A DNA stretch of 45,328 nt, taken from NCBI RefSeq assembly GCF_001194135.2, contig NC_068999.1:20174608-20219935 (forward strand). The letters run 5' to 3'. The position numbers and the translations under genes were made by a program. A model generated the notes under the pieces. The model searched no databases. It saw nothing but the letters and a program-made list of their open reading frames with translations, and had not been told where the DNA came from. Shown piece after piece: positions 154-717 of this stretch. This DNA comes from Octopus bimaculoides. Its lineage: Eukaryota. Every line of letters starts with the position of its first letter. The first letter of the stretch is position 1.

Positions 154-717
154 ATTATTACAATTAAAAGGGTAAAGGATTATCAATTTATTAATAGATT
201 AATAATTAATAATTTTTACCAAGCCCTTCGGTATTTAATCACCATTATCGGTGTGGAACTTATTTAAAAATTCTTATACATTTATAAACAAAATTAAGGG
301 TCCAGCAACAGGTTGCTTCACCACATACCGAAGTTCAGAAATAGCAGCTAAAAATGCTGAAACTCCAACAGATAGCATTTACCCGCAACTCACATAGGCA
401 AAACAAGAACTAAAATAACGAACTAAACTAGCCATAGTTAATCATAGACATGTTTCTGGTTTAGGAGAATAAAAACTCTTCATTACCACATCGGTATGAT
501 ATTCCTGTTGTAAATTCGACGATACTGGCAAATGTGCATGCATGATCTAGCGTCTAACCTGTTGCTGAACCCTTAATTTTGTTTATAAATGTATAAGAAC
601 GTTTAAATAAGTTCCACACCGATAATGGTGCTTACATACCGAAGGGCTTGGTAAAAAATTATTAATTATTAATTTATTAATAAATTGATAATCCTTTACC
701 CTTTTAATTGTAATAAT
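154..717. mobile_element. Non-autonomous foldback (long inverted-repeat) element, 564 bp; Penelope-type inverted terminal repeat or MITE
   Basis: Left arm 154-314 and right arm 556-717 are reverse complements; manual alignment gives 6 substitutions + 1 indel over about 161 bp. Spacer 315-555 is non-coding. The core could also be read as TA|CAATT...AATTG|TA (161-710 with TA flanks). The right end runs into a (TA)n tract. Confidence 0.8.
441..500 (-). ncRNA. Candidate type I hammerhead ribozyme (variant core) in the foldback spacer
   Basis: Minus strand reads ATCATA-CCGATG-TGGT-(24 nt)-ACCA-GAAA-CAT-GTC-TATGAT. This gives a perfect 6-bp stem I, a 4-bp stem II base adjacent to GAAA, a palindromic helix III (ACAUGU) and a GUC cleavage triplet. 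The core deviates from CUGAUGA (U4>C, A9 missing). Confidence 0.55.

What the first reader, a model, noticed from the sequence alone, without database searches (positions are those of the whole stretch)
154..717. Foldback element whose loop carries a hammerhead-like ribozyme
Seen: 161-bp arms about 96% identical enclose a 241-bp spacer, and the spacer holds a complete type I hammerhead architecture (441-500, minus). Known: Penelope-like elements carry type I hammerheads in their terminal repeats and often generate inverted or partial-tandem termini. Inferred: this is a small non-autonomous, ribozyme-containing element. Its transcript would be a long dsRNA hairpin with a self-cleaving loop, unlike a typical MITE, and could be a retrozyme-like family mobilised by a PLE reverse transcriptase.
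Basis: partly seen in the sequence, partly recalled or inferred. Interest (0 to 1): 0.75.

Follow-up and report, generated by a model that had tools for sequence, protein, structure and literature searches.

The report
Decayed hammerhead retroelement, inverted-tandem insertion
The "foldback" is a compound insertion of a short non-coding retroelement (one long copy, a tandem neighbour and a truncated inverted copy) whose family carries a hammerhead ribozyme motif that is mutated here; it is an ordinary new member of the known Penelope-type/retrozyme class.

Summary
The inverted repeat is real: 154-314 versus 556-717, 155/162 matches, 241-nt spacer. It is not a foldback element with a loop.

Public reads of the source organism show a 543-nt unit arranged head to tail. 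The spacer continues directly into window 1-146 in 83 genomic reads. So the minus strand carries a 5'-truncated copy (552->154) followed in tandem by a second copy (146->1 and beyond). The right arm is a 162-nt, 5'-truncated copy in inverted orientation, abutting the first copy's 5' end through a 3-nt filler and followed by (AT)8. This is the published architecture of Penelope-like element (PLE) insertions.

The claimed hammerhead gets no Rfam hit. In this copy its core box reads CCGAUGU, with U4C and A9U. In the family, A9 is restored in about 100% of copies and U4 in 12-24%. H17 is never G, loop 3 stays palindromic (CAUG, CGCG, CAUAUG), and reconstructed helix II variants differ in a pair-preserving way.

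The family therefore looks like a non-autonomous, hammerhead-bearing PLE-type/retrozyme-like retroelement, and this copy's ribozyme is probably dead. It is a new member of a known kind. No PLE partner, cleavage or circular RNA was shown.

The parts
1..146 (-). 5' part of a second copy of the 543-nt unit, in tandem downstream (on the minus strand) of the main copy. It runs off the window start. Window 1-9 (GATCTAGCG) equals 544-552.
   Evidence: Joint '543->1, goes back 543, 9 shared letters' in 83 genomic reads from 60 starts and in 7 RNA reads. Logan loose ends after 551 read ACCATCAT... = window 10-17. Depth is about 200-430 copies.
147..153 (.). AT-rich linker (with 146: AATAATTA) between the 3' end of the main copy and the 5' start of the tandem copy. 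Its length varies among family copies.
   Evidence: 50-100 genomic reads per run cross 142-160, with 4-nt and 1-nt deletions at 148, 154, 159 and 161. The head-to-tail junction is therefore itself multi-copy.
154..314 (-). Left arm: the 3'-terminal 161 nt of the main copy. On the minus strand it ends ...CCCUUUUAAUUGUAAUAAU.
   Evidence: Depth corresponds to about 10^4 copies. An expressed copy ends at 711 and then runs into (GT)n, which places the 3' end near ...TTAATTGT plus a microsatellite.
307..376 (-). Most abundant, most conserved segment of the family (about 3x10^4 copies).
   Evidence: Summed contig depth is 0.7-1.4 million against single-copy depth of about 40 in X2. Raw-read depth is about 1,300 against 160 for the flanking parts.
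315..552 (-). The 'spacer': the 5'-ward body of the main copy, 5'-truncated at 552/553. Copy number falls stepwise towards 552.
   Evidence: X2 depth steps: 0.32M (362-373), 0.12M (374-385), 58-88k (386-445), 16-29k (458-541), 4.8k (542-553). In other copies the right-arm sequence is preceded by ...CGGTATGTGGTGAAGC, the mirror of 315-330.
441..500 (-). Hammerhead-like type I motif, mutated in this copy (CCGAUGU). Helix I is 495-500/441-446, GAAA is 453-456, loop 3 CAUG is 449-452, C17 is 447, and the predicted cleavage site lies between 447 and 446.
   Evidence: for anatomy. for family variation: 488 A>T about 100%, 493 G>A 12-24%, 447 G>A/T only, 450 A>G with 451 T>C at matched frequency, and canonical-box variants in loose ends. 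for helix II variants. No Rfam hit.
553..555 (.). 3-nt filler (TCT) at the head-to-head junction of the two 5' ends.
   Evidence: Homology to the unit ends at 552 (9 shared letters) and the right arm starts at 556. Raw reads cover 552-554.
556..717 (+). Right arm: a 162-nt, 5'-truncated copy of the unit's 3' end, in inverted orientation.
   Evidence: It keeps the family-majority base at 5 of the 6 positions where the arms differ. Its private variants occur at single-copy depth of 45-50 in X1.
718..733 (.). (AT)8 microsatellite directly after the right arm; probable AT-rich target.
   Evidence: Read from the sequence. Contigs from other loci join 5'-truncated copies (at 221, 296, 335, 352) directly to AAT/(AT)n. 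An AT-rich/(TA)n target preference of PLEs is reported in PMC8557442 and PMC11167929.

Best explanation
The locus is a compound insertion of a non-autonomous, hammerhead-bearing retroelement of the PLE/non-LTR-retrozyme type.

The family unit is 543 nt with no ORF, and its sense strand is the window's minus strand. Units lie head to tail. Here a 5'-truncated unit (552->154) is followed by a second unit (146->1 and beyond). A 162-nt 5'-truncated copy in inverted orientation (556-717) abuts the first unit's 5' end, so the two 3' ends point outwards and form the 161/162-nt inverted repeat.

Inferred mechanism: multi-unit transcripts are reverse-transcribed by a PLE RT/GIY-YIG protein encoded elsewhere. 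That protein nicks AT-rich DNA and can prime from both the top and the bottom strand. The two cDNAs meet head to head and are joined with a short filler.

Shown here: the anatomy, the tandem and inverted junctions, the copy-number gradient, and hammerhead-consistent variation in the family.

Inferred, not shown: the PLE partner, the two-strand priming at this locus, and any ribozyme activity. This copy's ribozyme is predicted to be inactive (U4C, A9U).
For: 1. Tandem unit. The joint 543->1 appears in 83 genomic reads from 60 starts, and the linker junction 142-160 is crossed by 50-100 reads per run. The + strand order is therefore cyclic with period 543.
2. 5'-truncation. Stepwise depth falls from about 3x10^4 copies (307-376) to a few hundred (458-552 and 1-146).
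3. Inverted truncated copies recur. About 19 distinct contigs from other loci join an antisense copy truncated at 322-446 to a sense copy starting at 556-686. Raw reads show opposite-strand joints 234/358, 223/375 and 352/377. This locus's own junction is read through by about 19 raw reads.
4. AT-rich boundaries. Both arm ends read ATTATTAC, an (AT)8 flank follows, and truncated copies at other loci are joined to (AT)n.
5. Hammerhead. In the family A9 is restored in about 100% of copies and U4 in 12-24%. H17 varies only among C, U and A. Loop 3 reads CAUG, CGCG or CAUAUG, all palindromes. Distal helix II reads AAGAG/CUCUU, GGAGUG/CGCUCC or GAAG/CUUC.
6. Strand consistency. The hammerhead strand equals the sense strand inferred from truncation, and it is the more structured strand (circular fold z = -6.05 against -2.86).
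7. Literature. PMC8557442 describes partial tandems plus an adjacent inverted 5'-truncated copy, a (TA)n bias and assembly trouble. PMC11167929 reports both strands cleaved and extended, an ATT motif, multi-copy RNA templates and a dispensable HHR. PMC4209133, PMC7229834 and PMC7761336 describe type I HHRs with 1-2-bp helix III and palindromic loop 3 in tandem repeats of 150-450 bp with low GC.
Against: - No PLE RT/GIY-YIG gene was found in the window, and no 3'-end similarity to an autonomous element could be tested.
- No Rfam hammerhead model matches.
- All copies carry an extra A between C11.1 and G12 and a long interrupted helix II.
- About 80% of the close copies have U4C.
- RNA is scarce, reads cross 446/447, and no end pile-ups appear.
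- The RNA joint 543->1 also exists as DNA, so it says nothing about circles.
- The unit (543 nt) is longer than described retrozyme repeats (150-450 bp).
- TSDs and the PLE 'tail' could not be examined, because the left end lies outside the window.
- The family picture comes from read and contig pile-ups on one copy, not from aligned full copies. Linkage between variants is mostly inferred from matched frequencies.
Confidence: 0.6

Rival explanations
1. A LINE-dependent SINE family with a microsatellite-like tail. The inverted pair and tandem arise from repeated insertion into earlier copies' AT-rich tails or from aberrant target-primed reverse transcription. The hammerhead-like motif is a relic with no role.
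For: 5'-truncation gradient and very high copy number of the 3' part. Variable microsatellite after the 3' end. Most close copies have a non-canonical U4C core.
Against: No tRNA, 5S or 7SL head. Twin priming gives non-overlapping inverted segments, not two copies of the same 3' end each with its own tail. The head-to-tail junction has a fixed 5' start and recurs in 50-100 reads. Recurrent 5'-to-5' junctions are a described PLE trait.
Confidence: 0.14
2. A 543-bp satellite-like tandem repeat that incorporated a dispersed repeat. The right arm marks an inversion breakpoint at the edge of an array.
For: Cyclic order with period 543. The scaffold appears to stop exactly where the unit re-enters itself (window 1 = unit position 544).
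Against: Only about a third to a half of reads covering the end of 1-146 continue into linker plus arm. Parts of the unit differ about 100-fold in copy number. Many loci show 5'-truncated copies joined to unique sequence, to (AT)n or to inverted copies.
Confidence: 0.08
3. A genuine foldback or MITE-type DNA transposon with 161-bp terminal inverted repeats and a variable internal region produced by deletions.
For: Long, 96% identical inverted arms. Head-to-head junctions at variable positions could be read as internal deletions. The inverted junction of this locus occurs in several copies.
Against: The sequence outside the left terminus (1-146) is the family's own continuation of the internal sequence. 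In other copies the right-arm sequence continues inwards past 556. About 10 times more copies continue from 552 into window 10 onwards than into the inverted arm. There is no direct repeat at 152-153/718-719 (TA versus AT). The arms are unrelated to the one TIR-bounded element in the window.
Confidence: 0.05
4. Two independent insertions of an abundant repeat that happen to lie in opposite orientation.
For: The family has at least 10^4 copies. The arms differ at 6 positions, 5 of them private to the left arm.
Against: The two 5' ends abut within 3 nt. Both arms share minority bases at 254, 255 and 301. The same kind of junction recurs at about 19 other loci.
Confidence: 0.05
5. A mis-assembly of a repeat-rich draft scaffold.
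For: No Logan contig crosses 553-556 at 98% likeness in four runs. PLE structures are known to break short-read assemblies (PMC8557442).
Against: Raw genomic reads cover 552-554 in all three runs tested. Private variants of the right arm occur at single-copy depth.
Confidence: 0.03

Closest known systems
Penelope-like element (PLE) insertions and their pseudo-LTRs with minimal hammerheads (Evgen'ev & Arkhipova; Cervera & de la Pena 2014, PMC4209133; Craig et al. 2021, PMC8557442; Frangieh et al. 2024, PMC11167929)
   Same: Heavy 5'-truncation. Partial head-to-tail tandem. An inverted 5'-truncated copy adjacent to the 5' end, producing inverted repeats. AT-rich/(TA)n boundaries. A type I hammerhead with minimal helix III and palindromic loop 3. 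Trouble in short-read assemblies.
   Different: No RT/GIY-YIG ORF: the whole unit is 543 nt and closes on itself. The hammerhead has a long interrupted helix II and an extra A on the 3' side of helix II, whereas PLE motifs have the extra base after A9. The 30-40-bp 'tail' was not examined.
Metazoan non-LTR retrozymes (Cervera & de la Pena 2020, PMC7229834; review PMC7761336; Li et al. 2026 preprint 10.64898/2026.07.22.740005)
   Same: Non-coding head-to-tail repeats of low GC (36.5%), each with one type I hammerhead and a weak helix III. The unit RNA is strongly self-paired (z = -6). Proposed dependence on PLEs.
   Different: Unit of 543 nt against 150-450 bp. Most copies are 5'-truncated 3' fragments lacking the ribozyme, so the family behaves like a SINE with 10^4 or more copies. 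Circular RNA was not shown, expression is low, and most close copies have U4C.
Naiad PLEs (Craig et al. 2021)
   Same: Complex tandem/inverted insertions, (TA)n target bias, very high copy numbers, and reported presence in cephalopods.
   Different: Naiads are reported to lack canonical hammerheads; this family has a hammerhead-type motif.
Foldback elements and long-TIR MITEs
   Same: Long, nearly identical inverted arms around a non-coding middle. The locus can fold into a long hairpin.
   Different: The arms are not the ends of the mobile unit. No TSD is present. The internal sequence continues into the 'flank', and the right arm is a truncated copy of a longer unit.

Membership tests
Hammerhead ribozyme, type I | Box 1 C3-U4-G5-A6-N7-G8-A9 | tested here: not met
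   This copy reads CCGAUGU (U4C, A9U). In the family A9 is present in about 100% of reads and U4 in 12-24%, and the divergent variants read CUGAUGA.
Hammerhead ribozyme, type I | G12-A13-A14, the A15.1-U16.1 pair, and H17 (not G) before the cleavage site | tested here: met
   GAAA-CAUG-UC|U at 456->446. No variant at 3% or more in GAAA or U16.1. Position 17 varies only to U or A.
Hammerhead ribozyme, type I | Helix II closed by G10.1-C11.1 directly next to A9 and G12 | tested here: not met
   GG...CC pairs exist, but an invariant extra A (457) separates C11.1 from G12. Helix II is 2-3 bp, then an internal loop, then 4-6 bp.
Hammerhead ribozyme, type I | Match to a curated covariance model (Rfam) | tested here: not met
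   No hammerhead family at gathering score or at E<=10.
Hammerhead ribozyme, type I | Stems supported by compensatory change | tested here: inconclusive
   Loop 3 changes CAUG->CGCG at matched frequencies and in the same-looking two contigs in X7, and CAUAUG also occurs. Distal helix II has three different pairing sequences. Helix I never varies. The variants are reconstructed from read consensus, not from aligned copies.
Hammerhead ribozyme, type I | Self-cleavage | not testable with these tools
   RNA-seq shows about 10 reads crossing 446/447 and no end pile-ups, but these are probably from the opposite strand.
Metazoan non-LTR retrozyme | Head-to-tail repeats, each with one type I hammerhead | tested here: met
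   Period-543 joint in 83 DNA reads, and the linker junction is multi-copy. There is one motif per unit.
Metazoan non-LTR retrozyme | No ORF, LTR, PBS or PPT; GC below 50% | tested here: met
   The longest ORF in 100-800 is 48 aa. GC is 0.365. LTR, PBS and PPT were not searched for specifically; no direct terminal repeat appears.
Metazoan non-LTR retrozyme | Monomer of 150-450 bp | tested here: not met
   The unit is 543 nt.
Metazoan non-LTR retrozyme | Abundant circular RNA of unit length | tested here: inconclusive
   7 + 2 RNA reads carry the unit junction, but the same junction exists in DNA. Overall RNA depth is low.
Penelope-like element (autonomous) | ORF with RT and GIY-YIG endonuclease | tested here: not met
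   No such ORF lies in the unit or elsewhere in the window. At most this is a non-autonomous dependant.
Penelope-like element (insertion architecture) | 5'-truncation, partial tandem, and an adjacent inverted 5'-truncated copy | tested here: met
   compared with the description in PMC8557442.
Penelope-like element (insertion architecture) | 30-40-bp 'tail' extension at one end; variable TSD | not tested
   The left end of the compound insertion lies beyond the window start.
Foldback / MITE DNA transposon | Both arms are the element's termini in all copies, flanked by a TSD | tested here: not met
   there is no TSD, the flank is the family's own sequence, and the right arm is a truncated copy.
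SINE (Pol III head, LINE tail) | tRNA-, 5S- or 7SL-derived 5' head | tested here: not met
   ARAGORN finds none. There is no Rfam tRNA, 5S or 7SL match even at E<=10.

The most novel reading that the evidence does not exclude
One of this genome's most abundant SINE-like repeats (10^4 to 3x10^4 copies of the 3' part) is really the truncated 3' end of a PLE-mobilised, retrozyme-like element. Its full 543-nt unit carries an unusual hammerhead, with an extended, interrupted helix II and an extra base on the 3' side of helix II, and this hammerhead is active as a dimer and yields circular RNA. The frequent inverted copies would also make it a genome-wide source of long hairpin RNA.
Probability: 0.2. 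Interest if true: 0.55.

Novelty: new member of a known kind. Interest (0 to 1): 0.35.

Why it matters
It shows that a striking 'foldback with a ribozyme in its loop' is the expected by-product of PLE-type integration, not a new element design. It adds a hammerhead-bearing, PLE-type non-autonomous family in a lineage where the papers I could search report no retrozymes; I infer a cephalopod, untested. If the abundant 3' fragments are confirmed to belong to this family, part of what repeat annotators call 'unclassified SINE' in this genome would be reassigned to PLE-dependent elements. The motif's deviations (U4C spread, the extra A before G12, the long helix II) offer natural variants for testing what a dimeric hammerhead tolerates.

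Tried and rejected
1. Rfam at gathering score and at E<=10 found no ribozyme or tRNA. I first took this as refuting the hammerhead. Low-frequency variant calling reversed that conclusion for the family.
2. A strict motif scan of the circular 543-nt unit (CUGANGA with at most 1 mismatch plus helix II) found nothing.
3. I searched the protein collection with a spurious 48-aa ORF to recover other copies, without result.
4. Exact and gapped DNA patterns in metagenome and prokaryote contig collections gave 0 hits, then 5 chance hits unrelated to the unit.
5. Logan contigs for the 553/556 junction were absent, but contigs cannot show absence; raw reads settled it.
6. RNA-seq ends at 446/447 were uninformative: the depth is too low and the reads are probably from the wrong strand.
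7. An apparent density paradox (depth divided by run size) disappeared once I saw that 'million letters' counts contig letters.
8. A weak inverted similarity between 26-54 and 509-537 was not significant and was dropped.
9. Pfam on the non-repetitive ORF fragments found nothing.
10. I considered twin priming as the source of the inversion. I rejected it because both copies carry the same 3' end.

Full report
OBSERVATION

The inverted repeat is exactly as described. Arms 154-314 and 556-717 share 155 matches over 162 aligned columns, with six substitutions and one 1-nt indel, and 241 nt lie between them. The element occurs once in the 45-kb window. As RNA the segment folds with the arms fully paired, at -276 kcal/mol and z = -25.

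The window is an AT-rich, microsatellite-rich eukaryotic draft scaffold with many N gaps. It has no long ORFs and no tRNAs. Its unique flank (800-1400) is held in full only by runs of 'organism A'. I suspect a cephalopod from the sequence style, but I did not test this and nothing below depends on it.

WHAT THE ARMS BELONG TO

I laid contigs of public DNA runs on the locus.

- The arms sit at 3-8x10^5 summed depth. Single-copy depth is about 40, judged from junction-specific contigs and from private right-arm variants at 45-50 in X1. That gives about 10^4 copies.
- Segment 307-376 reaches 1.4x10^6, or about 3x10^4 copies.
- Depth then falls stepwise to the right: 0.32M, 0.12M, 58-88k, 16-29k, and 4.8k at 542-553.
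- In other copies the right-arm sequence is preceded by ...CGGTATGTGGTGAAGC, the mirror of 315-330.

So the right arm is a truncated copy of a longer unit, and the 'spacer' is the continuation of the left copy.

Raw genomic reads settle the rest. 83 reads from 60 start positions join 543-552 directly to window 1-10 through the shared 9-mer GATCTAGCG. Separately, 50-100 reads per run cross the junction from 1-146 through the AT-rich linker into the left arm, with small indels in the linker. The + strand order is therefore cyclic: 10-146, linker, arm, core, 377-552, and back to 10. The period is 543 nt, which means head-to-tail units.

Read on the minus strand, the locus has three parts.

- An inverted 162-nt copy (556-717), antisense.
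- A 5'-truncated unit (552->154).
- A second unit (146->1, running off the window).

The window starts exactly where the unit re-enters itself. This suggests the assembler stopped there.

IS THE INVERTED JUNCTION REAL AND RECURRENT?

No Logan contig crosses 553-556, but contigs drop rare paths. Raw reads at >=97% likeness cover 552-554 in all three runs, with about 8, 6 and 4-5 reads. Depth on the unique flank in X42 is about 0-1. So the junction is real and probably present at several loci.

About 19 distinct contigs from other loci join an antisense copy truncated at 322-446 to a sense copy starting at 556-686. Raw reads add opposite-strand joints at 234/358, 223/375 and 352/377. Other truncated copies abut AAT/(AT)n directly. 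Here the right arm is followed by (AT)8, and both arm ends read ATTATTAC.

THE HAMMERHEAD

No Rfam ribozyme matches, at gathering score or at E<=10. In this copy box 1 reads CCGAUGU, an extra A precedes GAAA, and helix II is a 30-nt interrupted hairpin.

The rest mimics the published metazoan design (PMC4209133). Helix I has 6 bp. Helix III is a single A15.1-U16.1 pair capped by the palindrome CAUG. The cleavage site is UC|U. A descriptor built after the fact to accept this motif hits only this site and is expected 0.05 times per window.

Calling variants down to 3% in about 300 close copies changed my view.

- 488 A>T is essentially fixed, which restores A9.
- 493 G>A is at 12-24%, which restores U4 and gives CUGAUGA. 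The other base of that CpG (G5) shows no variant at 3% or more.
- Divergent copies seen as loose ends read ...UCAUACUGAUGAGG....
- Position 447 changes only to bases that keep H17 different from G.
- 450 A>G and 451 T>C occur at matched frequencies, and in X7 apparently in the same two contigs. They turn CAUG into CGCG. An AT insertion gives CAUAUG. All three are palindromes.
- Reconstructed variants keep the helix II layout with different pairing sequences: AAGAG/CUCUU, GGAGUG/CGCUCC and GAAG/CUUC.
- The hammerhead strand is the same strand that the truncation gradient marks as sense. It is also the more structured strand (circular fold z = -6.05 against -2.86).

I conclude, at about 0.7, that the family descends from a real hammerhead-bearing element, and that this copy's motif is dead. 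RNA-seq neither supports nor refutes cleavage. Depth is about 10 reads, they cross the site, they probably come from the opposite strand, and there are no end pile-ups.

COMPARISON WITH WHAT IS KNOWN

Craig et al. 2021 (PMC8557442) describe PLE insertions as highly 5'-truncated and often in partial tandem. [quoted passage not shown] They are biased to microsatellites and troublesome for short-read assemblies. Non-autonomous relatives share 3' ends with autonomous elements.

Frangieh et al. 2024 (PMC11167929) show several properties of a purified PLE protein.

- It cleaves and extends both DNA strands, unlike R2 and L1.
- It prefers AT-rich sites with an ATT motif.
- It uses multi-copy transcripts as templates.
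- It does not need hammerhead cleavage for insertion in vitro.

Metazoan non-LTR retrozymes are low-GC head-to-tail repeats of 150-450 bp with one type I hammerhead each. They are thought to depend on PLEs (PMC7229834, PMC7761336, preprint 10.64898/2026.07.22.740005).

The locus matches the PLE insertion architecture point for point and the retrozyme design in most respects. It differs in four ways.

- The unit is longer (543 nt).
- The family has a SINE-like excess of truncated 3' fragments.
- The hammerhead has an extra A and a long helix II.
- The U4C form predominates among close copies.

No paper I could search reports retrozymes or hammerheads in cephalopods.

RIVALS

I considered a LINE-dependent SINE, a 543-bp satellite with an inversion, a true foldback/MITE, two chance insertions, and a mis-assembly. 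Each fits less well, for the reasons given in the Rival explanations section. The main gaps in my own reading are these.

- No PLE partner was shown.
- No cleavage or circular RNA was shown.
- TSDs were not seen.
- The family picture was inferred from pile-ups rather than aligned copies.

VERDICT

The repeat is real. The hammerhead is real at family level but broken in this copy. The 'foldback element' is a compound PLE-type insertion that extends beyond the given coordinates. This is a new member of a known kind, of moderate interest to transposon and ribozyme specialists.

Noticed in passing
reads joined to window positions 143-147, 326, 496-506 and 585: A perfect 28-nt palindrome, GGTTCGTCCATCGATCGATGGACGAACC, is joined to many different positions of the element in genomic reads. 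In some copies it replaces the whole arm 154-325: 136 reads enter 326 from it and 27 leave 143-147 into it. It could be a modular 3' stem-loop of another subfamily or a head-to-head junction of another element's 5' ends.
   Followed up: partly
window 19017-20295: An element of about 1.28 kb bounded by 31-nt inverted repeats (87% complementary, ATATACCGGGTGCGTAAGGTATTTGAGGACA...). It holds frame-broken ORF pieces, including '...WPPNPN..PDLNRLDYYIW...', which reminds me of a DDE transposase C-terminus. Pfam gives no match even at E<=10. It lies between a (TA)n/N gap and another N gap, and its ends are unrelated to the arms studied.
   Followed up: partly
window, about 10 N gaps (e.g. 2.7-3.2 kb, 6.5-6.9 kb, 20.3-21.2 kb, 28.4-29.2 kb, 37.7-38.8 kb): Nearly every assembly gap is flanked by (TA)n, (TG)n or similar microsatellites. 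Given the family's microsatellite-adjacent ends and its effect on assemblies, some gaps may hide further copies. This is untested.
   Followed up: no
window 800-987: The right flank is itself repetitive. 800-893 lies at roughly 10-20 times single-copy depth in contigs at 85% likeness, and 894-987 at about 100-200 times. Truly unique sequence starts near 988. The locus may therefore sit inside a larger low-copy repeat.
   Followed up: no
window 1: The window begins exactly at the 9-mer (GATCTAGCG) at which the main copy is truncated (544-552). This would be expected if the scaffold ends where the assembly graph loops back into the repeat.
   Followed up: no
window 422 onwards (RNA reads): One diverged copy is the main expressed relative in three RNA-seq runs. 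After 422 its reads continue as AACTAACCAGTCGAAGTTAATCATAGATGC (14, 7 and 11 reads, 0.88-0.98 agreement), and its loop 3 region is altered.
   Followed up: no
window 1412-1628, 16742-17066, 24379-24485 and 25124-25332: Long pure microsatellites: (TCT)22 followed by (TTA)50, a 325-nt AG-rich array, (GAA)35 and (TTA)69.
   Followed up: no
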